Source of the DNA: Haliotis rubra
Taxonomy: Eukaryota
Assembly: GCF_003918875.1 (NCBI RefSeq)
Contig: NW_025766988.1
Coordinates: 124,001 to 188,000, forward strand
Reading direction: 5' to 3'
DNA length: 64,000 bases
The position numbers were made by a program, and so were the translations under genes. Below, piece by piece: positions 15,476 through 62,576 of the stretch. How positions within the stretch are numbered: the first letter of the stretch is position 1; each line of letters opens with the position of its first letter. The notes under the pieces were generated by a model. That model made no database searches. It was given only the letters and a program-made list of their open reading frames with translations, and was not told where the DNA came from.

Positions 15476-15615
15476 NNNNNNNNNNNNNNNNNNNNNNNNN
15501 NNNNNNNNNNNNNNNNNNNNNNNNNNNNNNNNNNNNNNNNNNNNNNNNNNNNNNNNNNNNNNNNNNNNNNNNNNNNNNNNNNNNNNNNNNNNNNNNNNNN
15601 NNNNNNNNNNNNNNN
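15476..15615. other. assembly gap (140 N)
   Basis: N run followed by a short (GATC)n tract. Confidence 1.
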
Positions 15616-20030: not shown

Positions 20031-20350
20031 TTGTCAACAGGTATTTATCAGACACGAGTGTCAGAGGGTGTTGCACTCCCTCCGCACCCCCGGAGTTTAA
20101 TTCACAACCATCATTCTCCGGCAGTCATCATGTTCTGAGGCCCGAAGGCCACAGGTAAGATGTTACAATACCTGATGACAATTACACTCAGCCATGCAAC
20201 GTTGTGTAATGGAAATGGAAAATTGAAATAATAAGGCCATAATCATTTGTATATACACATTCAATAAATGAGTTAAACTATTCTTACAACTGATTGGTCA
20301 CTAAAAGTGATGACGTCATATAGTTCCATTGTTGAGAACAATGTGGAACA
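20031..20350 (-). ncRNA. candidate structured ncRNA cassette, copy 1 (leader plus ~150-nt core)
   Basis: CRE 20311-20318, CCAAT 20293-20297, TATATA 20250-20255. Core 20031-20181 is closed by a 15-bp stem and contains a c(UUCG)g hairpin. Confidence 0.5.
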
Positions 20351-21604: not shown

Positions 21605-21920
21605 TTGTCACCAGGTATTAATCAGACACGAGTGTCAGAGGGTGTTGCACTCCCTCCGCACCCCCGGAGTTTAAATCACAACCATCATTCTCCGGCGGTC
21701 ATCATGTTCTGAGGCCCGAAGGCCACAGGTAAGATATTACAATACCTGATGACAATTTTACTTAGCCATTTAACGTTGTGTAATGGAAATGGAAATTGAA
21801 ATAATAAGGCTATAATTATTTGCATATACACATTTAATGAACGAGTTTAACTAATTCCAAAGCTGATTGGTCACTAGAAGTGATGACGTCATATAGTTCC
21901 ATTGTTGAGGAACAATGTGG
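21605..21920 (-). ncRNA. candidate structured ncRNA cassette, copy 2
   Basis: Core 21605-21755 nearly identical to copy 1; CRE 21884-21891, CCAAT 21866-21870. Confidence 0.5.
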
Positions 21921-22162
21921 AAAAATATTTTCCATTGTCAAATCAATATGCGTTTGTAATCAGACCAATATTTGTCTTTTAATTGCTATAAGCAGATCCT
22001 GTTCTGTTGTTGAGAACAATGTGGTACATGTCAACTATTGTTCGTGATGTCTCAAATTGATAGTGTTATGTCTCCAGACCAATATTTGGCGTCTGTAAAG
22101 TGATTTTGTTGGGTTTAATGTTCTGGTCGGGGTTTTTTTCATCGTCAGGTTTATACTGGCAT

Positions 22163-24737: not shown

Positions 24738-25052
24738 CCACATTGTTCTCATAAATGGAACAGTATGACCAATCTGTTTTCGTGACCAGTCAGTTTTAGG
24801 AATTGTTAAACTTTTTCATTAAATGTGTATACTCAAATAATTATGGCCTTTTAACTTCAGTTTTCCATTTCCATTACACAACGTTGCATAGCTATGTATA
24901 ATTGTCATCAGGTATTGTAACATCTTACCTGTGGCCTTCGGGCCTCAGAACATGATGACTACCGGAGAATGATGGTTGTGAATTAAACTCCGGGGGTGCG
25001 GAGGGAGTGCAACACCCTCTGACACTCGTGTCTGAAAAATACCTGATGACAA
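24738..25052 (+). ncRNA. candidate structured ncRNA cassette, copy 3
   Basis: Core 24902-25052 with a perfect 15-bp closing stem TTGTCATCAGGTATT/AATACCTGATGACAA. Confidence 0.5.
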
Positions 25053-25188: not shown

Positions 25189-25340
25189 GAAGGGATGAAG
25201 GTTTGTGAGACGCTGTGAAGACAATTGGTGACATTAACAAACAGTGTGACTTCTTCTTGCTTTGTGTGACCAATCATTTTTGCAAATAATCAAACTAATT
25301 CTTTTAATGTACATATACAAACGATAATGTCACGAATGTA

Positions 25341-26127
25341 GGAAAGAAAGTCACAGGAAAAAAAGTCACGGACAAAATGTCATGGATAAAAAGTCATGAA
25401 TAAAAAGTCACGGATAAAAAGTCATGGATAAAAAGTCACAGGAAAAAAGTCACAATACAATAAGATATATACTAGTTATATAATATATACCAGTGGGTTG
25501 TAAATTGTCTCAATTGTTATAACAGCTTCTGTTTCTGACATGATAACACGATTAATGAGGTAATTGGGACGTGAAACCAAGAGTGATCAGTGAACGTGAG
25601 TGTTGTCTACTGTACGGTACTGTACTGTGTGCTGACGATTAGCTGCCTGACTCTGAGGGTGTGGGTTCGAATCCCGGGTGGGACTCAACCCAACAAAAGT
25701 ACTAGAATTTCTACTTTACTAATAAAGTGTAATCACAAATATAACATATGTTACAAGTGACTTGGTTTAAGTATTTACGTTTAGCCATGTCCTTTCCCAT
25801 TTGCATCATGGATTTTATTAAAAGCAACATTATTTGAAAATAGTGAGTATGATTTTATGCCGCTCTTAGCAATATTCCAGCAACATCACGGCGGGGGACA
25901 CCAAAAATGGGCTTCACACATTGTACCTATGTGGGGAATCGAACCCGGGCCTTCGGCGTGACGAGCGAACGCTTTAACCACTAGGCTATCCCACAGCCCC
26001 AAATAGTATTTGAAGGACACATGTACAGTAAGCACGCAAGTCTCTGATTGATCCTGAGATTTATTGTCATAATTAAACATAATAATAAACAGGTATTGTG
26101 ACTTTTTTTCCTGTGACTTTCTTTCTG
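25341..26127. mobile_element. TIR element with 15-bp subterminal repeats and a nested family A SINE (25843-26000)
   Basis: GAAAGAAAGTCACAGGAAAAAAAGTCAC and its exact reverse complement at ~26099-26126. Confidence 0.75.
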
Positions 26128-29315: not shown

Positions 29316-30159
29316 TGCTATATTAATACATGTATCATTTTTTTGTGCTGAAAATTTGTTAAATGACCACTGGAACTCTGGTGAAAATGAATAGTGTGTG
29401 CGCGCACGCACACACACACACGCACACACACACACACCTCAAAAAGCTGTATCCGCCCCTGAATTTTCAAAAGTGGTCTTAGTTTTGTTTTAAAGGGAAT
29501 TATGTTAACTTCATAAAACTTTACGAAAATGCGACATTTATAAGTGATGGCCTTTCTACTTATTCTTGTTTATTTACAATACAAAAATACACAAATTTTA
29601 AATTACAGAGTGTTTTTTCTCGACCTCTATGGTTTTGTTTGCCACTTAATTACACTCCCCTGAACAATTTCTATATTGATGCCAGTGATCTCTCCGAAAA
29701 AAGCATTGCTGTATCTCATTTCCTCTTACATCTTCAAGTAACAGTACTATAATAGCTTCGTGTGTAGGTAGAGACTTATCTTCCAGAACAATCGAGCTTC
29801 TCCACTATATGTCAAATAAAGTGTCAAATTTCAATCCGCCTCCCCAAAGTATCTAACTGAGTTTTCTTTGAATAATACTTCATCTACAAGTTTAATTTGG
29901 GGAAATTCTTACCTTTACTGTTACTCACAAACTTCTAAATTGCCAAACTAATACTTTATTTCTCACATTAACAATAATGGAAACGAAATTGAATGGAAAA
30001 ATAAGTATTCGAATATTTCCATTTGAGTGAATGTTGTTTGACGTCTAGCTCTGGTATAATCACGTGTAAATAATTGAGTCTTGACTCATGCAAACCAGTG
30101 TCTGAGTGCATGACCACCGATCAACCCCCTTAGAAGTGCATTGAGAAAAAACGCAATTT

Positions 30160-32256
30160 ACAGATGCTAGCCACTCTGTCCCCGGGATATACAGATGCTG
30201 GCCGCTCTGTCCCCGGGATATACAGATGCTGGCCGCTCTGTCCCCGGGATATACAGATGCTGGCCGCTCTGTCCCCGGGATATACAGATGCTAGCCACTC
30301 TGTCCCCGGGATATACAGATGCTAGCCACTCTGTCCCCGGGATATACAGATGCTGGCCGCTCTGTATTATGCTATAAGTGCTGAGTGACATCGCTTGTGG
30401 AGCGACGTGCAGAGACAGATGCTAGCCACTCTGTCCCCGGGATATACAGATGCTAGCCACTCTGTCCCCGGGATATACAGATGCTGGCCGCTCTGTCCCC
30501 GGGATATACAGATGCTGGCCGCTCTGTCCCCGGGATATACAGATGCTGGCCACTCTGTCCCCGGGATATACAGATGCTGGCCCCATTGTCCCCGGGATAT
30601 ACAGATGCTGGCCACTCTGTCCCCGGGATATACAGATGCTCTCCGCTCTGTCCCCGGGATATACAGATGCTGGCCGCTCTGTCCCCGGGATATACAGATG
30701 CTAACCACTCTGTCCCCGGGATATACAGATGCTGGCCGCTCTGTCCCCGGGATATACAGATGCTGGCCCCTCTGTCCCCGGGATATACAGATGCTAGCCA
30801 CTCTGTCCCCGGGATATACAGATGCTAATCTCTCTGTCCCCGGGATATACAGATGCTAGCCACTCTGTCCCCGGGATATACAGATGCTAGCCACTCTGTC
30901 CCCGATATACAGGATATACAGATGCTAGCCACTCTGTCCCCGGGATATACAGATGCTGGCCGCTCTGTCCCCGGGATATACAGATGCTGGCCGCTCTGTC
31001 CCCGGGATATACAGATGCTGGCCGCTCTGTCCCCGGGATATACAGATGCTGGCCGCTCTGTCCCCGGGATATACAGATGCTGGCCACTCTGTCCTCTGTC
31101 CCCGGGATATACAGATGCTGGCCACTCTGTCCCCAGATGCTAACCACTCTGGGATATACAGATGCTAGCCACTCTGTCCCCTGGATATACAGATGCTAGC
31201 CACTCTGTCCCGGATATACAGATGCTGGCCGCTCTGTCCCCAGGATATACAGATGCTAGCCGCTCTGTCCCAGGATATACAGATGCTATCCACTCTGTCC
31301 CCGGGATATACAGATACTAACCTCTCTGTCCCCGGGATATACAGATGCTAGCCGCTCTGTCCCCGGGATATACAGATGCTAACCTCTCTGTTCCCAGGAT
31401 ATACAGATGCTAACCACTCTGTCCCCGGGATATACAGATACTAGCCGCTCTGTCCCCGGGATATACAGATGCTGGCCGCTCTGTCCCCGGGATATACAGA
31501 TGCTAGCCACTCTGTCCCCGGGATATACAGATGCTAACCACTCTGTCCCCGGGATATACAGATGCTAGCCGCTCTGTCCCCGGGATATACAGATGCTAGC
31601 CGCTCTGTCCCCGGGATATACAGATGCTATCCACTCTGTCCCCGGGATATACAGATACTAGCCTCTCTGTCCCCGGGATATACAGATGCTAGCCGCTCTG
31701 TCCCCGGGATATACAGATGCTAACCTCTCTGTCCCCGGGATATACAGATGCTAACCACTCTGTCCCCGGGATATACAGATACTAGCCGCTCTGTCCCCGG
31801 GATATACAGATGCTAGCCACTCTGTCCCCGGGATATACAGATGCTGGCCTCTCTGTCCCCGAGATATACAGATGCTAGCCACTCTGTCCCCGGGATATAC
31901 AGATGCTAGCCACTCTGTCCCCGGGATATACAGATGCTGGCCACTCTGTCCCCGGGATATACAGATGCTAGCCGCTCTGTCCCCGGGATATACAGATGCT
32001 AGCCACTCTGTCCCCGGGATATACAGATGCCAGCCACTCTGTCCCCGGGATATACAGAAGCTAGGCGCTCTGTCCCCGGGATATACAGATGCTGGCCTCT
32101 CTGTCCCCAGGATATACAGATGCTAGCCACTCTGTCCCCGGGATATACAGATGCTAGCCGCAGATGCTAGCCTCTCTGTCCCCGGGATATACAGATGCTA
32201 GCCACTCTGTCCCCGGGATATACAGATGCTGGCCACTCTGTCCCCGGGATATACAG
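30160..32256. repeat. 31-bp satellite, right arm (reverse complement)
   Basis: About 65 units, with a short unique interruption near 30365-30415. Confidence 0.97.
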
Positions 32257-33517: not shown

Positions 33518-34972
33518 ATTCCGATCTCATTAAGTGGGGGAGTGACGACCTAATCGTCTGAGGTACACGTGCTTCCATTAGATGAGCAGAGGTGTCATAT
33601 ACAGTCAACTCTCGTTAATCCGACACTCGTGGTTGCAGAGAAATATGTAGGATTAACGAAAAAATGTCGGATTAATGTATTTGTGTGAAAATATCAATGT
33701 TTACTAAATGTCATGATCGTCATACTGTTGCATGCATATTATCAGAAATGGTAGATCTAGTTATCTTCATATTCACAGAAATAAAAAATAATAACAATAC
33801 ATCCTTTATTAACATTCACAGATGACATAACATACAAATATAATCACATAAGCAATCAGTTTCATATCTATTTCATAACCACATCGGCACAAAACTCGCG
33901 TTTGTTTTTACCACATATCAGCAGCCATTATGACCCGGATGTTGTATATGTTACAGTTCCATACTAACATGTGGACGTCTAGTGAACAATCAGGCATTTA
34001 TCATAACATTTATAATTTATAACTTGAAAAAGTCTTTGATGGTCATTAACATCAACCATCAGCTGGATTTTGCTGAGTGCGGCATTAAACAACAACGGAC
34101 AAACAAGCAACATCGTTGGCCAACAAATCCCGTGTTCGTCATTAACCAAAATCCCCATAAGAATCGTCTCCAACCAGTTTTGGGTTCTTTTTTGTTCAAG
34201 AGAATATGATGGCATGACAAGCATTAGAAATAATATTATAGAACCTGCAGTAATTCAGTGTTAAAGTATACATAATCATGATGTATATAATACAGACAAA
34301 TTGACAGGTCTGAAATCTTTAAAAAATATATGCTAGAAGTCCTTCTACCTCTTTCAGAGTACCTCTGCAACAATATATTATTATGTTGCCAAGTTTAATC
34401 GGTTAGATAATTTAAAAAGCGAAAGTGAGTTGTGATTAGTACGCTCAACTTCCCAGCGTAGACACCTGATTGGATAAAAAGTCAACCAAGGGAGGTAATA
34501 AAATCATCGGCTCGAGCCGTAGATGCATCCAGGGTGTAGTGGAGATTTATCGGAACGTATACCCTAGAGATTATCGAGGATGTGTGCGAAATTGTTTCCA
34601 AATTTTGCTTGTCAGTCGAGCTATAGCTATGCCTGAAAGTTACTAGCCCACAAAATAATTCACTAGCCCGAAATTGAAATGTGGTCACGGGTTTCAGCAT
34701 TTAGCTGCTAATATGATGAACATTTTAACCAGGCCATAACCTTGCCTGATTTAAAAGTGTATGATAACGTAACAAATCGGAGAGAGTGATATATTTACAA
34801 AATGACCCCAAGAAAATTAATTCACCAGCCAGTCGGGCCAGTAACTGTGGAGATTTACTGGCCCGACTGGATTTTTACTAGCCACGGGCTAGCGGGCGAG
34901 TGGCTATTTCGCACACTGCCAACAACACAGCTTCATATTGATACTTTTTAATGATGGCCAATTCAACTTTAA

Positions 34973-35135
34973 GGGGCGCCGGGGTAGCCTTATGGTTAAA
35001 GCGTTCGCTCGTCACGCCGATTCCACACATGGCTACAATGTGTGAAGCTCATTTCTGGGGTTCCCCGCCGTGATATTGCTGGATCATTGCTAAAAGCGGC
35101 GTATAACTAAACTCCCTCACTCACTCATTCACTCA
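34973..35135 (+). mobile_element. SINE family A
   Basis: Consensus match; flanking repeat TCAACTTTAAG. Confidence 0.85.
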
Positions 35136-35172
35136 ACTTTAAGACAATCCTTCTGAAGGGATGATGTAGCCA

Positions 35173-35243
35173 CAGACGCGAGCAGCCTGGTTCCCTGGGT
35201 CTGTTAACGCAACAGACCCAGGGAACCAGGCTGCAGACGCGAG
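35173..35243. repeat. short perfect hairpin flanked by a direct repeat
   Basis: GCAGCCTGGTTCCCTGGGTCTGTT...AACAGACCCAGGGAACCAGGCTGC between CAGACGCGAG copies. Confidence 0.75.
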
Positions 35244-35541
35244 GTACTCAAAACATGCCATGATTAAACAACGTCACACATGATGTGATTTAAGTTTGAA
35301 ACAACCAACGTGAGGTTCTGCGACCCAAGAACATGGTATGACGTACTTTGACACTCATGTCTGTATGATGCCTCTTTGCTGATAAGAACGATAGTGTGTG
35401 ACCTATGGCAGATAATATGTCATTCTATCAGTTTCGAGTAGGCATGCCATTTTATGTATAAAACATTTTAATTCGAGAACAAACAAAACGAAAATGTAAA
35501 AAAACGCATGTTGAGACATCGTTTACAATAGACAACGTGAA

Positions 35542-35815
35542 CCACATTGTTTCCCCAATAGATCAAAATGACGTCATCGGTTTTAATGACCAATCAGCTT
35601 TGGGAATAGTTAAACTCGTTATTAAAAGTGTATATACAAATGATTATGGCCTCTTTACTTCAATTTTACATTTACATTTATTAACGTTGCATGGCTTGAA
35701 CTGGGTGACAGTAAATGACAGCTGAGACTCTAGTGGCTCAAAAGATGTTGGTGCAGATCGAAAGGTACATAACTTTGACACTAGCACTCGTGTCTAATTG
35801 ACTCCTTTCACAAGT
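35542..35815 (+). ncRNA. cassette copy 5: conserved leader with a different downstream segment
   Basis: CCACATTGTT..TGACGTCA..TGACCAATCAG..GTGTATATACAAATGATTATGGCCT..AACGTTGCATGGCT as in copy 1; ends with the shared CACTCGTGTCT. Confidence 0.4.
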
Positions 35816-36009
35816 AATTAGTTTTTTATTATTAGAATAAGAATGTTTTCTCAAACATGTCACTTAAGTTTTTATGTAAGCGGAGAATGTTGGACATGGA
35901 CTCGACTTTCCCACATGGGTACAATGTGTGAAACCCATTTCTGGTGTCCTCTGCTGTGATATTTCTGGTATATTGCCGAAAGCGGCGTAAAACTAAACTC
36001 ACTCACTCA

Positions 36010-36260
36010 CTTTAACGACCGATCAGGTTTTGTAAAGTTAAACTCGTTTATTGAATGTTTATAATTTGCAAATGAAAAAAAAGCCTAATTACTCCAATGT
36101 TGTATTTACACTACACTCAGCTGCGTGCTATCATATCTGTACTCAGATATTGTAACATCTTACCTGTGGCCTTTGGGCCTGGGGACAGCCGGAGACTGAT
36201 GGTTGACAACTAAACTCCGGGGCTCGGAGGGAGTGCAACCACAGACCCGCGTGTCTTTGC
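36010..36260 (+). ncRNA. cassette copy 4 (diverged core; a SINE abuts the leader)
   Basis: TATTGTAACATCTTACCTGTGGCCTTTGGGCC..GCCGGAG..CTCCGGGG..CGGAGGGAGTGCAAC retained. Confidence 0.45.
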
Positions 36261-36285
36261 GAGTATTAAATATTAATAGTATATA

Positions 36286-36939
36286 AGTAATCAGTTTCGG
36301 ACATCAAAGCATTCCTAAGGAGAACAATTGCATTCCTAAGGAGAACAATAGCATTCCAGGGGAGAACAATAGCATTCCAGGGGAGAACAATAGCATTTTT
36401 TAAGGAGTACTCCTACATACCAAAGGAGTTTTCAGGAGCACATTCCATAAATTCCAGCGAGAACAATAGCATTTTTCAAGGAGCGCTCCTACATACTCAA
36501 GGAGCTTTCAGGAGCACATTCCATAAATTCCAGGAGCTGTCTTTTGAACCTATTCCATGACATCATTATATAAAGGTGGCCAACATTCCACCGATTTCAA
36601 ATTTAATAGCAATGCTTTCAATATATTAAATTTGCTTGGTTCATATTCATAACATTTCAATACACATTCCCATCTCCGTGAGTCGTGATGTTAAATAAAG
36701 ACGCCACTTAACTCTTTACCGGCTGGTATAGAACCATAGTGTAGGCTATCATTGTATACAACAGGGTTAAGGGTTCAAAGGACAGCTCCTGGAATTTATG
36801 GAATGTGCTCCTGAAAACTCCTTTGGTATGTAGGAGTACTCCTTAAAAAATGCTATTGTTCTCCCCTGGAATGCTATTGTTCTCCTTAGGAATGCTATTG
36901 TTCTCCTTAGGAATGCTTTGATGTCCGAAACTGATTACT
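36286..36939. mobile_element. foldback/MITE with long TIRs and ~20-bp subterminal repeats
   Basis: AGTAATCAGTTTCGGACATCAAAGCATTCC... and its reverse complement at ~36773-36939. Confidence 0.85.
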
Positions 36940-37319
36940 ATATACTACTAATATTTTCAAAAAGTATATATAACTTTGAGATGACACCCCACACCCCAAC
37001 CCCCACTGTGAGACAGATTTGAGTTGTAGTTACTATGGTTTAACGCCGCTCTGAAAATATTGCAGTTATACCACATGCAGCTTGTCGTGATGCAGATCTT
37101 TTAATTGATCACCTTGATCAACTCAGCCAGCACGTGTATGGTGCTGACAAACCTTAAAATCAGTGCGAACTGAAATTCGAACCCTACGATGATTGGTTTC
37201 TATCTCTACGAACGGACGCACATCCGCCCCCTCCGCCCCCAATAAAAAACACACACAAAACCAACACAAAACACACACACACACACACACACACTGAATG
37301 AGATCGGATTTGTTTGTAC

Positions 37320-56478: not shown

Positions 56479-59419
56479 CACCTTTGTCTGTGCTGCAGAC
56501 ACACATATAGATATGTGATAAGTTTTCAGACTCAGACACAAACGCTGGCTATGGGTACGTGTCGTGTTCCTCATTTATAAGCATAAACAACTGAAAACAT
56601 TGACATCAACTATGTCAGCAATTCCGGTGCCTATATTGCGTAAAATGCTGTAGACATATACGTAAGTGTTGAAGACTGTGTTACAGATACATACGTCTAT
56701 GTGTAATTTAGTTACTAGTACAGAGACACGTGTGTCACTGTTCTTGGCAGTCGACATTACAGGAGATCAGAATCACACATACACACATGGCTTCGGGAAG
56801 GCAACGTTGCGCTACAGTTACAACATACAGACATGCATCGACTATAGTGACAACGTAACATGTTCTATTTGGGATTACAGTTTCTCAGTAAAATACAGAT
56901 TCTAGTACTTTTGTTAGGCTGATCCCCATCCGGGATTCGAACCCGGACTCTCGGACAGAATATAATCAGAATGTGTCAGTGAATCAATATGAAAGAGTGC
57001 TGATACCAGATGCTCACGAGAAGCCAGCGAATATCACTAACATGGCTACTAACGATTCTACTTTTGGTTGCGAGAGCAGTTAACTTCGGTTATAACGAAC
57101 TCATATGGACTTTAGTATTCGTTATACGCGCTTTGATTAAAATATACAGCAAGTGGCAGGGTGAAAAACCCGTTCATTTTATAGAAAAATAAATACACTG
57201 AAAGTTATGTTTCTGGAGAGAGAAGTATGTTACGTTAAGATTATTACATTTTTTTTGTGGCTCCACACACCAGAATCTTCCATTGAAGGTAAATATTATT
57301 CTCCCACACAACACGACCGGGATGTTATTAACAACGCATTTACATAGATTAACATATTACTATTGGTGGGGCTGACAACAGACAATGCTGTCACTGTCGC
57401 AGGGGATCAAAAAAGCACTTACAAGTAGACAACGCTACATTCCCGTGGGTAATTCATGGGGTGACAACATTTGATGAATTTCGGTAGGTGGGGGATATTT
57501 CGGAGGAATATAAGCTTAATATTCATAATTTTTATCTAGAGTGTAGAAGTTTCTTTTGAAATAAGTTTCCTTTGGGGTGGGCTACGTATTATATAAAGGT
57601 GAAAGATAATCCATTTGTGGGTTAAACGTAAACATATTACACATTTTTCTTATAAAACGATGTGGGTTTTCTTTCTATACAGTGAATTTATGACACCAAG
57701 TGTGAGATTAATGTATAACAGGCGTCATAATTTCATCAGGAACTACTTCAGCAAATAGGACTCGTATAAGTTATAAAAACTTACAAACGACGCATAACTG
57801 AGGGTTTCTCGTGGGTTTTTTAGGTAAACGGTTGACCTGGCTTTGCATATGTTTGTGATGGGTGGTGACGACGGTGCAGGATACGCTTACCTTTTTCAAA
57901 TATGTTGTATCAGGGCCATTTAATAGCATCTAATAAACACCTGCTCCTGATACAGCCCGAATCGATCAAGCGAGTCTGTTAGCATAGATTTTTTAATGTA
58001 TATCTTAATGGTTTTGTCCCTTTTGTTTATAAAATCTATTCATTGAAACCTTGTACATACTCCGTGCTAAACAGTTAATAGTTGAAATATGTTTCACTCA
58101 GAAACAAATAATATTATCCACATGAAATATATTTTCTCATTGAAGTGACCGATCAAGATTAGGGCGACACACATTCCAAAGTATTACGAATAAATGTATC
58201 CATACGCCTGTAAAGTTGAAGTAAAACTGCAGTTTACTTACTGATAAATTGGCGCAATAACATGCAGTAGTTTTGCGGACGGATCTATTTGCGGAATTCC
58301 GCAGAAATATGTCACTCCCTCGGATAGGTAAAGAGTAATTCTATGAATTTTACCACCTGCAGCAAGATGAATAGTGTTTGTTGAAATAATCATTTGGATC
58401 AGTTTCACAGCACAGCACAACAGCGGTTGTGTTTCGCTAATTTGCGAAAGGAGTGTTTCGTTACTTTTCAGCAGGAGTGTTTCGTTAACAGGAGCCTGAT
58501 ACTTGAGCTCTGTGTAAAGTGCAGTTGAGTTATATAAATGCTATGGGCAGTTAATGACCGTAGATAAGAGTATTATTCATTATGTCGATTATTCAATTCA
58601 TCATCCGAAACAAACAGAGATTTGCAGGTGTGTCGCCGAATTGTTTACCGATACTGTTTGCCTACGGCTATTTGACAGTAAATCATTCGACGCCATCTGC
58701 AACCGTTCTGTCACAGAATGGATTAAAATGGCGGTTTCCGTGTTCTGACTTGTTACAAATTGTACACGAATTATTTTATTGCACCGTTGGGAGAACAATG
58801 GTTTCATTACGGATTGTTACCGGTTGGGTACACCGGCCCCAGATGTTTCAATGTTGATTTACACACCCGTGGTCCCCAGGGGCAATTCAATGCTGTTCTC
58901 TGTACGACTGCTAATGCTTTTATCGGTGACGTTTGAGTCATTCTGATACAAATCAATATTACAGTGTAGATTATTTAGTATCTCTCTGTCAGATGGTACT
59001 TGGGAAAATTATTAATTAATTATGATTTGTAAATGGGGTATTTAAGGTCTTTTATTGAGTTGCGATGATGTAATAGGAATGTGATGATATTTTAGACGTT
59101 AAGTACATGTGTGATTACGTGTTTTCTCCGTGTTTAGAACCGTTCCGTCTCATGCCGAATGGGCTTCACAAATTTTAGCACTCGTGGAATCGAACATGGC
59201 TTTTCGGCTTGACGGGCAAACACTCAAGCCACAAGGCTACTCTATTTTAAAACCAAGCAGAGGCTGTTCTTTATAAAGACGCCTACCAGAACGATGTGGG
59301 GTTGAAAGTATGTGGGTGAGTTTATGAGGGTAGGAGTGATGGTGTCAGTACGGGGTGGGGGTAGATGTGTTAATATTGCGGTGTACTAGTCGGAGTGATG
59401 TTGCACGCGTGAGGTTTAC

Positions 59420-60720
59420 GGTAGATGTGTGGGTTTGAGGGTAGAAGTGTGGGTTTGAGGGTAGAAGTGTTTAGATTACACATGGTGTACGAGAGGGAGT
59501 GATGGTGTAAGTGTGGGGTTGGAAGTAGAAGTGTGGGATTGAGGGTAGAAGTGTGGGTTTGAAAGTAGAAGTATGGGGTTTAGGCCACTTGAGAGTAGAA
59601 GTGTGGGGTTGAAGGTAGAAGTGTGTGGTTGAGGGTAGAAGTGTGAGGTTGAGGGTAGAAGTCTGAGGTTGAAGGTAGAAGTGTGGGGTTGAGGGTAGAA
59701 GTGTGAGATTGAGGTTAGAAGTGTGGGGTTGAGGGTAGAAGTGTGGGGTTGAAGGTAGAAGTGGGGTTGAGGGTAGAAGTGTGGGGTTGAGGGTAGAAGT
59801 GTGGGGTTGAAGGTAGAAGTGTGGGGTTTAGGGTAGAAGTGTGAGGTTGAGGGTACAAGTGAAGGTAGAAGTGGGGGGTTGAAGGTAGAAGTATGAGGTT
59901 GAAGGTAGAAGTGTGGGGTTGAAGGTAGAAGTGTGAGGTTGAAGGTAAAAGTGTGGGTTTGAAGGTAGAAGTGTGATGTTGAAGGTAGAAGTGTGGGGTT
60001 GACGGTAGAAGTGTGGGGTTGAAGGTAGAAGTGTGAGGTTGAAGGTAGAAGTGTGGGGTTGAAGGAAGAAGTGTGGGGTTGAAGGTAGAAGTGTGGGTTT
60101 GAAGGTAGAAGTGTGAGGTTGAGGGTAGAAGTGTGAGGTTGAAGGTAGAAGTTTGGGGTTGAGGGTAGAAGTGTGGGGTTGAAGGTAGAAGTGTGAGGTT
60201 GAGGGTAGAAGTGAGGTTGAAGGTAGAAGTTGTGGGGTTGAGGGTAGAAATGTTGGGTTGAAGGTAGAAGTGTGAGGTTGAAGGTAGAATTGTGTGGGGT
60301 TGAAGGTAGAAGTGTGGGGTTGAAGGTAGAAGTGTGGGGTTGAAGTGTGGGGGAGGTAGAAGTGTGGGGTTGAAGGTAGAAGTGTGGGGTTGAAGGTAGA
60401 AGTGTGAGGTTGAAGGTAGAAGTGTGGGGTTGAGGGTAGAAGGTGGGGTGTGGGGGTGAGGGTAGAAGTGTGGGGTTGAAGGTAGAAGTGTGGGGTTGAA
60501 GGTAGAAGTGTGGGGTTGAAGGTAGAAGTGTGAGGTTGAAGGTAGAATTGTGGGGTTGAGGGTAGAAGTGTGGGGTTGAAGGTAGAAGTGTGGGGTTGAG
60601 GGTAGAAGTGTGGGGCTGAAGGTAGAAGTGTGAACTTTAAGGTAAAAGAGTGAGGTTGAGGGTAGAAGTGTGGGGTTGAGGTTAGGGGTGTTGGTTTAAG
60701 GGTATAAGTGTCGGGGTGAG
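59420..60720. repeat. 20-bp G-rich minisatellite (GAAGGTAGAAGTGTGGGGTT)
   Basis: About 60 units with strong strand asymmetry. Confidence 0.95.
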
Positions 60721-61417
60721 AGTCAAATTCTAGGGGTAGGGTCGTGAGAGTGATTGTGTCGAACTGAGGGTAGACATATGGGGGCGGGATTTCAAATGTC
60801 GGGGCGAAGGGTGTAAATGTGGGGATGAGAATACAATTAAGGGGTAGGGGTTTAAGTTCGGAATGGAATGATGGTGGTGGCGGCAGTTCCAGGGAAATTC
60901 GACTCTAACAAGTAAGAAAGGGTTGCACAAGCACATAACGAAACGGAATAGAACAGCAATTTAGGGAAGAGGAAGTAGAATGCAGACAAAGCAACCTATC
61001 TATTCTGGGCGTGTGTAAATATACAGCAGCGACTGAAATCATCGAGGCGTGAATTTGTTTCTATAACAGTCCCGTCAGTATGGCGAGAAAGCCGAAGCAG
61101 CAGATCCGTGCTACTGCATGGCGTTGGATCTCTCGAGTTGACGGGAGTTGACGGGAGTTAAAGGGAGTACGACCAAAACAACTCTCTCACTCTCATCTTT
61201 CGCAATATTCCAGCCACAGCAGGGCAGGAATGTGCCTGAAACTGGCTTCACACATTGAACCCATGTGAGGATCGAACCCGGTCAAGGGTGTGACAATGTA
61301 ACACTTTAACCACATGGCTACCTTAAGGTTAGAAATAATCATTTTAGTATTAAATGATTAAGAACAGTATCAGGAAGACTTGTCTCCCAAACTGTCAACA
61401 GATAGCCATGTAGCATA

Positions 61418-61515
61418 CAGACCTGGGGCCCGATCCACAAAGCGTCTTAATTTCGATCGTGAACAGTTACGAATAGTGTCGCTACGAACGCTTTGTGGAT
61501 CGGGCCCCAGGTCTG
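61418..61515. mobile_element. short palindromic MITE
   Basis: CAGACCTGGGGCCCGATCCACAAAGCGT ... ACGCTTTGTGGATCGGGCCCCAGGTCTG. Confidence 0.8.
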
Positions 61516-62576
61516 TTTGATTGGCATTTTAGAAAATGGTGAAGACCTATACTGTTTTCAAACAAGCATGAAGTACCACAGAACATAAAAGACTTATCTA
61601 TTTCCTGTATCCCTACCTTGATATTCCTGGAATACATACGCCTTTACTCAGTCATTTCCAAAACGATATACCTAGGAATTTTAACTACACAATTACAAGA
61701 CGAAATTAATTAAATAAATGTACAATGAAATGACTTTCAAGTACCTCAGATTATTGTCTGGCCTCCAATGTGGTGAAAATGTTGAAATTCGACACACCAA
61801 GCGGCTGGACAAACAGCCAACGTGGCGAATAACAGTGGCGCCAAACTCTTAGAGAACACCCATGTTGAAGGTCAAGGACGTCGTATGTTTTGGCTAGGCG
61901 ACGTAAGACTCACGCCACTGAGACGCCTTCCTGCAACATGCTTGGCGCTTTTCGTTTCTTGTTTCACAATTTCCAAAAATATAAATATTAGATGTAAAAA
62001 CAGGTTGTCAATCAATGGATAAGCGCGAAGAGTACGTAACCCATTGTGCTGTGTTCTTTTAGAGTTCGGTGAGCTTAGTCCAACGATGCGCCACAATTCG
62101 CTGTGTAGAGTTGCCTCCCTTGCATGTGTAGGGGATTCCAAGGCCGGATATACCCAATGTCTGTTGCCATAGCCTAAAGTGGGGATTACAATGTTGGACA
62201 ACCTACCCTGGCGGCGTGGATTCTTGTATTCCCTTAGTACTCCATTATATATGTAGTATAGCCGATTGACCAGAATTTCGGTTACCTCACTACGTGAAAT
62301 GCCAATATGGAAAGGGCGTGATGGACTTCAAATGCCCAATGAAATTAGTGAGTTCGGTTACACTATACCACCCCCCACCCCTAACCCCGGTTCCACCAAT
62401 GCAAAACCTTAACTTGAATGTTGTCCAAGGGTAACTCTGCTTGACGAATGTGGAAATGACAAGCCATGCCGAATGACAAGTGAGGCCGCTGTTGAGATAT
62501 GTTTTTCGTGCATTGCATACCGATGTGTATGACTGTCGACTCATGATTGGTGATGTTTTTCATTCTTCTGTTTCAG

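What the first reader, a model, noticed from the sequence alone, without database searches (positions are those of the whole stretch)
35542..35815. Same leader and 3' motif, different cargo: a variant cassette
Seen: ~155 bp align to the copy 1 leader, with CRE, CCAAT, GTGTATATAC and AACGTTGCATGGCT intact. The sequence then switches to ~110 nt I cannot align to the core, containing a possible GAUC-GAAA-GGU GNRA hairpin. It ends in GACAC-n8-GTGTC including the shared CACTCGTGTCT, and could be closed by GCUUG/CAAGU. It lies directly upstream of copy 4, in tandem. Inference: a constant expression frame with a variable internal RNA, like a guide or cargo architecture, or a strongly diverged paralog under structural constraint.
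Basis: partly seen in the sequence, partly recalled or inferred. Interest (0 to 1): 0.7.

Follow-up and report, generated by a model that had tools for sequence, protein, structure and literature searches.

The report
Decayed U8 snoRNA gene copy
The "variant cassette" is a dead copy of a U8 small nucleolar RNA gene that keeps the family's promoter and a short piece of its 3' end but has lost every RNA element that makes U8 work, so it is an ordinary gene relic and not a modular guide or cargo system.

Summary
About 196 bp (35502-35697) match the sequence upstream of copies 1-3 (nhmmer E 4e-42). The next 80 nt cannot be aligned to them. The shared CACTCGTGTCT returns at 35785-35795.

The "leader" is therefore their non-transcribed promoter, and the "3' motif" is the U8 3' end next to the D box.

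The finding (c5) has no C box. Its D box reads CTAA instead of CTGA. It lacks the U8 5' domain and the middle hairpin. It folds no better than shuffled sequence (z +0.7, against -3.2 for real U8) and scores 3.6 bits on a model built from this genome's own U8 genes.

The leader occurs four times in the 1.38-Gb genome, all in this cluster, and only c5 carries a non-U8 body. That body is unique in the genome. C5 lies between two other decayed U8 copies (c6, c4) amid transposon insertions.

One point stays unexplained. The promoter has diverged no more than that of an intact copy, so the body changed much faster, either by rearrangement or by faster mutation of a still-transcribed dead gene. Expression could not be tested because no RNA run was listed.

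Verdict: U8 pseudogene, low interest.

The parts
35502..35697 (+). It carries CRE-like ATGACGTCAT 35568-35577, CCAAT 35590-35594, GTGTATATAC 35628-35637 and the proximal motif AACGTTGCATGGCT 35683-35696.
   Evidence: nhmmer with a profile of units c1-c3: E 3.8e-42, model positions 72-274. Identity to c1-c3 is 80-82%. Genome-wide BLAST finds this leader only at c1, c2, c3 and c5.
35698..35777 (+). Body that cannot be aligned (80 nt) and takes the place of about 125 nt of U8. It has no UGAUGA. Its only CTGA is at 35722-35725. It contains the direct repeat TGACAG-TAAA-TGACAG at 35706-35721.
   Evidence: Alignment scores lie within the range of shuffles. The covariance model R1 gives 3.6 bits. The sequence is unique in the genome. 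The fold is no better than shuffles.
35778..35797 (+). Remnant of the U8 3' end. CACTCGTGTCT (35785-35795) is kept, with a 6-nt insertion before it. The D-box position reads CTAA (35794-35797) instead of CTGA.
   Evidence: Alignments A1 and A2. The body profile matches 35779-35807. Pattern search.
35798..35822 (+). Remnant of the 3' flank or 3'-box region. CCTTTCACAAGTAAT compares with CCTGTTGACAAATGAT of c1.
   Evidence: Alignments. The motif ATACCTGNTGAC is shared by U8 types A and B downstream of the D box.
36007..36259 (+). Copy 4: a U8 pseudogene. Its promoter is truncated at a SINE insertion, its C box is deleted and its D box is lost.
   Evidence: nhmmer E 8e-43. Covariance model R1: 51.4 bits at 36141-36259. 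No Rfam U8 match even at E up to 10.
35262..35395 (+). Copy 6: a further decayed U8 fragment. It has the proximal promoter motif, a 5' domain, a C-box region reading ACATGGTATGAC, an internal deletion, and a 3' end reading CACTCATGTCTGT.
   Evidence: Local alignment to the U8 core was reached by 1 of 2000 shuffles. nhmmer matches 35346-35395 with E 0.22.
35890..36012 (+). SINE copy with a (CTCA)n tail, inserted in the promoter of copy 4. A second copy at 34975-35140 sits in front of copy 6.
   Evidence: 15 copies in the window, and the two copies here are 83% identical.
20047..20178 (-). Copy 1: intact U8 snoRNA gene (reference for the family).
   Evidence: Rfam RF00096: 58 bits against a gathering score of 41. 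Fold z -3.18.
21621..21752 (-). Copy 2: intact U8 snoRNA gene.
   Evidence: Rfam RF00096: 57.4 bits.
24905..25036 (+). Copy 3: intact U8 snoRNA body. Its promoter has the CRE and CCAAT motifs mutated.
   Evidence: Rfam RF00096: 56.3 bits. Promoter alignment.

Best explanation
C5 is a pseudogene of a U8 small nucleolar RNA gene, lying in a small decaying tandem sub-array (c6, c5, c4) beside three intact U8 genes.

Shown: the unit arose by duplication of a whole U8 transcription unit. It keeps the upstream promoter, the last 11 nt before the D box and part of the 3' flank. The RNA-coding body has lost the 5' domain, the C box, the middle hairpin and the D box. Inferred: the 5' domain is the part that pairs with 28S rRNA in U8, and the middle hairpin is its LSm-binding hairpin.

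Inferred from established knowledge of box C/D RNPs: an RNA made from c5 could not assemble a box C/D snoRNP and would not accumulate.

How the body became unrecognisable is also inferred. The two options are rearrangement (deletion, small duplication, filler DNA) or faster mutation of a dead gene that is still transcribed from its intact promoter. It is not a module that carries interchangeable cargo.
For: - Copies 1-3 are U8 (RF00096, 56-58 bits).
- The c5 upstream region matches the U8 unit profile at E 3.8e-42, and the match ends at the leader.
- The 3' end CACTCGTGTCT and the flank are homologous. The full-length local alignment was reached by 3 of 1000 shuffles.
- There is no UGAUGA anywhere in the body, and the D-box position reads CTAA.
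- The covariance model of this genome's U8 gives 3.6 bits, against 51 bits for pseudogene c4.
- The fold z-score is +0.74 or -0.08, against -3.2 or -3.7 for U8.
- The leader occurs only four times in 1.38 Gb, all in this cluster, and the body is unique.
- The neighbours c4 and c6 are demonstrably decayed U8 copies. The stretch is riddled with SINE, palindrome and MITE insertions.
- A partial promoter copy at 25240-25329 is followed by a minisatellite, which shows that unit debris occurs in the cluster.
- In human, transcribed snRNA genes carry significantly more variants than untranscribed pseudogenes, which the authors suggest might result from their high transcription rate (PMC13640761). SnoRNA and snRNA genes are also enriched for variants in R-loop regions in rare disease cohorts (PMC12165836 abstract).
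Against: - The promoter is as well kept as that of intact copy c3: 13 against 12 lineage-specific changes in 157 columns. All four motifs are intact. Uniform neutral decay cannot explain a body that has become unalignable over the same time.
- Homology of the 80-nt body to U8 is not demonstrable. Several registers of weak similarity exist and none is significant. Descent of the body from U8 is therefore inferred from position, not shown.
- Expression was not tested because no RNA run was listed. A stable transcript is not excluded.
Confidence: 0.72

Rival explanations
1. C5 is an expressed U8-derived gene with a new function. The retained snRNA-type promoter and 3' box would produce a capped RNA of about 95 nt with a new sequence and a role unrelated to box C/D function.
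For: The promoter has diverged no more than that of an intact copy, and all its motifs are intact. The 3'-box region is about 80% kept. The body has diverged far more than its flanks, as expected if constraint on the old function was lost while transcription was kept.
Against: The RNA has no C/D boxes and no evident Sm site. It has no excess secondary structure. It is a single copy with nothing to compare it to. With a c5-specific divergence of 8%, the chance that 20 to 37 motif positions stay untouched is about 0.05 to 0.19, so no selection is needed to explain the intact motifs (my calculation). The 3' flank carries 19 lineage-specific changes against 8 in c3. The neighbours are clearly dead copies.
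Confidence: 0.12
2. The U8 body was replaced in one event by unrelated DNA, for example filler or templated insertion at a repaired break, or part of a mobile element. The cassette would then be a chimera and not a decayed U8.
For: Homology breaks sharply at 35697 and resumes at about 35778. The body shows no significant similarity to U8. The short direct repeat TGACAG-TAAA-TGACAG (35706-35721) is compatible with a templated repair scar.
Against: No donor exists anywhere in the genome, even at 3 mismatches per 30-40 nt, nor in metagenomes. Weak collinear traces of U8 or c4 are present: CTGGG(T)GACAG resembles the c4 junction, and GGTGC and GTACATAAC resemble the 3' hairpin. The 3' remnant and flank are themselves heavily mutated, which a single recent event does not explain. 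This reading concerns how the pseudogene arose and does not conflict with it being a pseudogene.
Confidence: 0.12
3. This is a modular expression frame, with a constant promoter and 3' motif carrying interchangeable guide or cargo RNAs.
For: Only the bare pattern at this one locus: a shared promoter and 3' end with a different middle.
Against: The genome-wide leader search finds four copies, three of them ordinary U8. The second U8 cluster has no such variants within 20 kb on either side. There are no further copies in the flanks of the window that were fetched, 20 kb upstream and 10 kb downstream. The variable part has no long antisense match. It has no structure.
Confidence: 0.03

Closest known systems
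U8 small nucleolar RNA genes (Rfam RF00096), independently transcribed box C/D snoRNA genes with snRNA-type promoters
   Same: C5 shares about 196 bp of upstream promoter, the last 11 nt before the D box and part of the 3' flank with the three U8 genes of the cluster. It has the same orientation and spacing of these elements.
   Different: The body lacks the U8 5' domain, the first hairpin, the C box, the middle hairpin, the 3' hairpin and the D box. It gets no covariance-model score. It is about 40 nt shorter.
Variant copies and pseudogenes in snRNA and snoRNA multigene families. Examples: human RNU variant and pseudogene copies (PMC13640761); the Xenopus U8 gene family of Peculis et al. 2001, which I know only from the reference list of PMC2943600 and did not read.
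   Same: It is a clustered paralog of an snRNA-type gene, with an inactivated RNA and neighbouring decayed copies. Literature on human snRNA genes reports more variants in transcribed copies.
   Different: Typical pseudogenes decay evenly or lose the promoter first, as c4 has here. In c5 the promoter is the best preserved part and the body the worst.
Copy 4 of the same array (36007-36259)
   Same: It is an adjacent dead U8 unit. Its promoter part is the closest to that of c5 (77%). The two may share a junction, CTGGGGACAG in c4 and CTGGGTGACAG in c5.
   Different: C4 keeps a body 79% identical to U8 (51 bits on R1) but has a promoter broken by a SINE. C5 shows the opposite pattern.

Membership tests
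U8 snoRNA (RF00096), for c5 | Match to the family covariance model at or above the gathering score (41 bits) | tested here: not met
   Rfam gives no U8 match in 34900-36400 even at E up to 10. A model built from this genome's own U8 genes gives 3.6 bits, E about 1.
U8 snoRNA (RF00096), for c5 | Box C (RUGAUGA) and box D (CUGA) placed to form the C/D kink-turn | tested here: not met
   There is no TGATGA in 35698-35800. The D-box position reads CTAA (35794-35797). The only CTGA is internal, at 35722-35725 (alignments).
U8 snoRNA (RF00096), for c5 | Conserved 5' single-stranded domain (ATTGTCATCAGG... in both U8 types of this genome), which pairs with the 5' end of 28S rRNA in vertebrate U8 | tested here: not met
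   The sequence is absent from c5. A duplex-energy test against this genome's 28S 5' end was uninformative, because genuine U8 did not stand out either.
U8 snoRNA (RF00096), for c5 | Middle hairpin with the conserved loop (LSm-binding octamer region), and 3' hairpin with a GCAAC loop | tested here: not met
   Neither hairpin can be aligned or folded. U8 types A and B keep both, with compensatory changes.
U8 snoRNA gene unit (DNA level), for c5 | The family-specific upstream promoter and 3' flank of this genome's type A U8 genes | tested here: met
   nhmmer E 3.8e-42 over 35502-35697. Identity is 80-82%. The 3' end and flank are homologous.
U8 snoRNA (RF00096), for copies 1-3 | Match above the gathering score, with C box, D box and all hairpins | tested here: met
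   Scores are 58, 57.4 and 56.3 bits, full length 1-135. The fold z-score is -3.18.
Expressed small RNA gene, for c5 | A discrete transcript | not testable with these tools
   No RNA run was listed for this stretch, so read laying could not be used.

The most novel reading that the evidence does not exclude
C5 is a still-transcribed U8-derived gene whose promoter and 3'-end signals are kept by selection while its RNA body has been remodelled into a new, fast-evolving, non-box-C/D small RNA. That would be birth of a new small RNA from an snRNA-type snoRNA gene.
Probability: 0.1. Interest if true: 0.55.

Novelty: new member of a known kind. Interest (0 to 1): 0.2.

Why it matters
This report resolves an "unassignable" RNA family. 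The cassettes in this window are U8 snoRNA genes, and the odd one is a dead copy. That removes a candidate for a new guide or cargo RNA architecture.

Two smaller points have value:
- The cluster gives clear U8 genes in an invertebrate genome, in two paralog types with compensatory changes in the 3' hairpin. A 2010 paper still stated that U8 was known only from vertebrates (PMC2943600).
- C5 pairs an intact promoter with a scrambled body. It could serve as a natural test of whether transcribed but unselected snRNA-type genes mutate faster than their flanks.

Tried and rejected
- Rfam in E-value mode over 34900-36400 gave only chance-level matches: a Bacteroides sRNA model on the minus strand and miRNA models on the palindrome at 35182-35234.
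- I aligned the c5 body to U8, c4 and c6 with several scoring schemes, locally and globally. Three different registers of weak similarity appeared and none beat shuffles. I therefore do not claim any one of them.
- A profile that included c4 and c6 as possible intermediates still matched only the 3' end of c5.
- The duplex-energy test of c5 and U8 against the 5.8S-ITS2-28S junction of this genome was uninformative, because the positive control (the U8 5' end) scored no better than shuffles. The first attempt timed out.
- I looked for a donor or an antisense target of the body in the genome with a 134-nt BLAST search and with 30- and 40-nt patterns at 3 mismatches on both strands. Only c5 itself was found.
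- Two metagenome scans, one with a promoter 24-mer and one with a body 24-mer, found nothing.
- No sequencing run was listed, so there is no expression test.
- The 20 kb on either side of the second U8 cluster held no decayed or variant units. Nor did the flanks of the window that were fetched, 20 kb upstream and 10 kb downstream.
- The region after copy 4 and the MITE held no further unit.
- A literature search for U8 in molluscs found nothing on the point.
- I did not verify the organism.

Full report
**What the family is.** A scan of the whole window against Rfam gives three matches above threshold. All are to U8 small nucleolar RNA (RF00096): 20047-20178 (-), 21621-21752 (-) and 24905-25036 (+), with 56-58 bits against a gathering score of 41 and full model length. 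They have the U8 C box (ACATGATGA), the D box (GTCTGAT), three hairpins and the conserved GCAAC loop. Copy 1 folds far better than shuffles (z -3.18).

The window is part of a 1.38-Gb eukaryotic genome (contig C2098). The same genome has a second U8 type on contig C2589, with two copies (52.8 bits). That type has 78% body identity, an unrelated promoter, and five pairs with compensatory changes in its hairpins relative to type A. U8 is therefore a real, selected gene family here.

**The observation.** A five-way alignment and a profile of the three complete units show that 35502-35697 is homologous to the region upstream of U8 (E 3.8e-42). The match ends exactly at AACGTTGCATGGCT plus one base.

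In the intact genes this motif ends 8 nt before ATTGTCATCAGG. That sequence is shared by U8 types A and B although their promoters are unrelated, so it marks the RNA 5' end. The "leader" is thus the non-transcribed promoter. By homology the start site in c5 would be near 35705.

Downstream, CACTCGTGTCT (35785-35795) is the U8 sequence that runs into the D box. The next 25 nt resemble the U8 3' flank. Between these lie 80 nt (35698-35777) that I could not align to U8 by any method:
- local and global alignment against shuffles;
- a profile that included the decayed copies;
- a covariance model built from this genome's four distinct U8 sequences (3.6 bits, E about 1).

**What c5 lacks.** There is no UGAUGA anywhere in the putative RNA. 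The D-box position reads CTAA. The U8 5' domain, the first hairpin, the middle hairpin and the 3' hairpin are all missing or unrecognisable.

The proposed GNRA hairpin, the GACAC/GUGUC hairpin and the closing helix do not amount to a structured RNA. The MFE is -22.5 kcal/mol against -25 +/- 3.4 for dinucleotide shuffles (z +0.74). For the predicted transcript 35705-35800 the z-score is -0.08. One arm of the closing helix lies upstream of the predicted start.

By established knowledge of box C/D RNPs, an RNA without a C/D kink-turn does not assemble with the core snoRNP proteins and is not stabilised. I saw no Sm-type site either.

**Is there a frame with variable cargo?** I searched the whole genome with the c5 leader and with the copy 1 leader. 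Each search finds only members of this cluster, and together they find four copies: c1, c2, c3 and c5.

The c5 body is unique in the genome on both strands. This holds for a 134-nt BLAST query and for 30- and 40-nt patterns with up to 3 mismatches. There is therefore no dispersed repeat, no donor and no long antisense target.

Neither the fetched flanks of the window (20 kb upstream, 10 kb downstream) nor 20 kb on either side of the second U8 cluster hold further units. One partial promoter copy (25240-25329, E 3e-08) is followed by a minisatellite. One variant among four leaders, plus one piece of promoter debris, is not a cargo system.

**Surroundings.** C5 sits in a short head-to-tail run of three damaged units.
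- Copy 4 (36007-36259) keeps a recognisable U8 body (51.4 bits on my model; 79% identity). It has lost the C box by an 8-nt deletion, has lost the D box, and has a SINE in place of its distal promoter.
It aligns to the U8 5' domain and C-box region (reached by 1 of 2000 shuffles) and to the 3' end. It has an internal deletion, a SINE and a 53-nt palindromic insertion in its promoter.
- A MITE-like element follows copy 4.

This is a decaying corner of the cluster.

**The unexplained part.** The c5 promoter is 80-82% identical to those of c1-c3. The promoter of intact copy c3 is 83% identical to those of c1 and c2. Lineage-specific changes over 157 promoter columns number 13 for c5 and 12 for c3. 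Seven of ten two-two splits group c5 with c3. C5 is therefore no older than c3, and its promoter has changed no faster.

Plain neutral decay over that time would leave the body roughly 90% identical to U8. Instead it is unalignable, and the 3' flank has 19 lineage-specific changes against 8 in c3.

Retention of the motifs does not by itself require selection. With 8% lineage-specific change, the chance that 20 to 37 motif positions all escape is about 0.05 to 0.19 (my calculation). Two mechanisms could account for the body.

(a) One or more rearrangements. Possible traces are CTGGGTGACAG at 35701-35711, which resembles the C-box-deletion junction CTGGGGACAG of copy 4, and the direct repeat TGACAG-TAAA-TGACAG at 35706-35721. 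In that register c5 would have lost the U8 5' domain by a deletion of about 50 nt. This register is not statistically supported, and two other registers score similarly.

(b) Faster mutation of a dead gene that is still transcribed from an intact promoter. In human, transcribed snRNA genes carry significantly more variants than untranscribed pseudogenes, which the authors suggest might result from their high transcription rate (PMC13640761). Variants in R-loop regions are also enriched in snoRNA and snRNA genes in rare disease cohorts (PMC12165836 abstract).

I cannot decide between (a) and (b). Both leave c5 a pseudogene.

**Rivals.** A new, functional, non-C/D RNA driven by the retained promoter is not excluded, because expression could not be tested: no RNA run was listed for this stretch. 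It has no positive support beyond the well-kept promoter. I give it about 0.1. The modular-cargo reading is close to refuted.

**Comparison with what is known.** At the DNA level c5 is a member of this genome's type A U8 gene-unit family (promoter and 3' end met). At the RNA level it fails every defining feature of U8 (model score, C box, D box, 5' domain, hairpins). It is best filed as a U8 pseudogene.

Clusters of snRNA-type genes with variant and dead copies are well known. The less usual aspect is that the promoter is the best preserved part. Separately, a 2010 paper stated that U8 had been found only in vertebrates (PMC2943600). From memory, later comparative work extended it to other animals, but I could not check this in the library.

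**Verdict.** The finding is an ordinary gene relic with one modest oddity, and its interest is low.

The assignment to U8 answers it.

Noticed in passing
window 20047-20178 (-), 21621-21752 (-), 24905-25036 (+); G000:C2589:764441-764575 and 768747-768881: The genome has two types of U8 snoRNA gene. Type A has three intact copies in this window. Type B has two near-identical copies on another contig, with 78% body identity, an unrelated promoter and five compensatory pair changes relative to type A. Both types share ATTGTCATCAGG at the 5' end and ATACCTGNTGAC after the D box.
   Followed up: partly
window 24760-24800 (promoter of copy 3): Copy 3 has an intact U8 body, but its CRE-like motif, CCAAT box, TATA-like motif and proximal motif each carry changes. 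The dead copy c5 keeps all four intact.
   Followed up: partly
window 25240-25329 and 25330-25450: A partial U8 promoter copy (nhmmer E 3e-08, CCAAT kept, CRE lost) lies just downstream of copy 3. It is followed by a minisatellite of about 13-nt AAAAAGTCAYGGA-like units and not by an RNA body. A duplicate of the distal promoter element also lies at 22002-22099.
   Followed up: partly
window 34975-35140, 35890-36012 and 13 other places: An abundant SINE-like repeat ends in a (CTCA)n or (CAGT)n tail. The two copies near the finding both sit next to TTTAA in the promoters of decayed copies c6 and c4. They may be one insertion that was later duplicated, or two insertions at a preferred site.
   Followed up: partly
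window 35173-35243: A perfect 24-nt-arm palindrome (35182-35234, 5-nt loop) is flanked by the 10-nt direct repeat CAGACGCGAG. It looks like a tiny hairpin element with a target-site duplication. Only chance-level miRNA model hits were found.
   Followed up: no
window 36268-36956: A MITE-like element lies just downstream of copy 4. Its inverted ends reach up to about 128 nt at 98% complementarity, and the ends themselves are built of 21-bp tandem repeats.
   Followed up: no
window 15476-15615: A run of 140 N (gap or masked).
   Followed up: no
window 30001-32000 and 58001-62000: There is a GC-rich block (54%, against about 40% elsewhere) and a stretch with strong GC skew (0.41-0.44).
   Followed up: no
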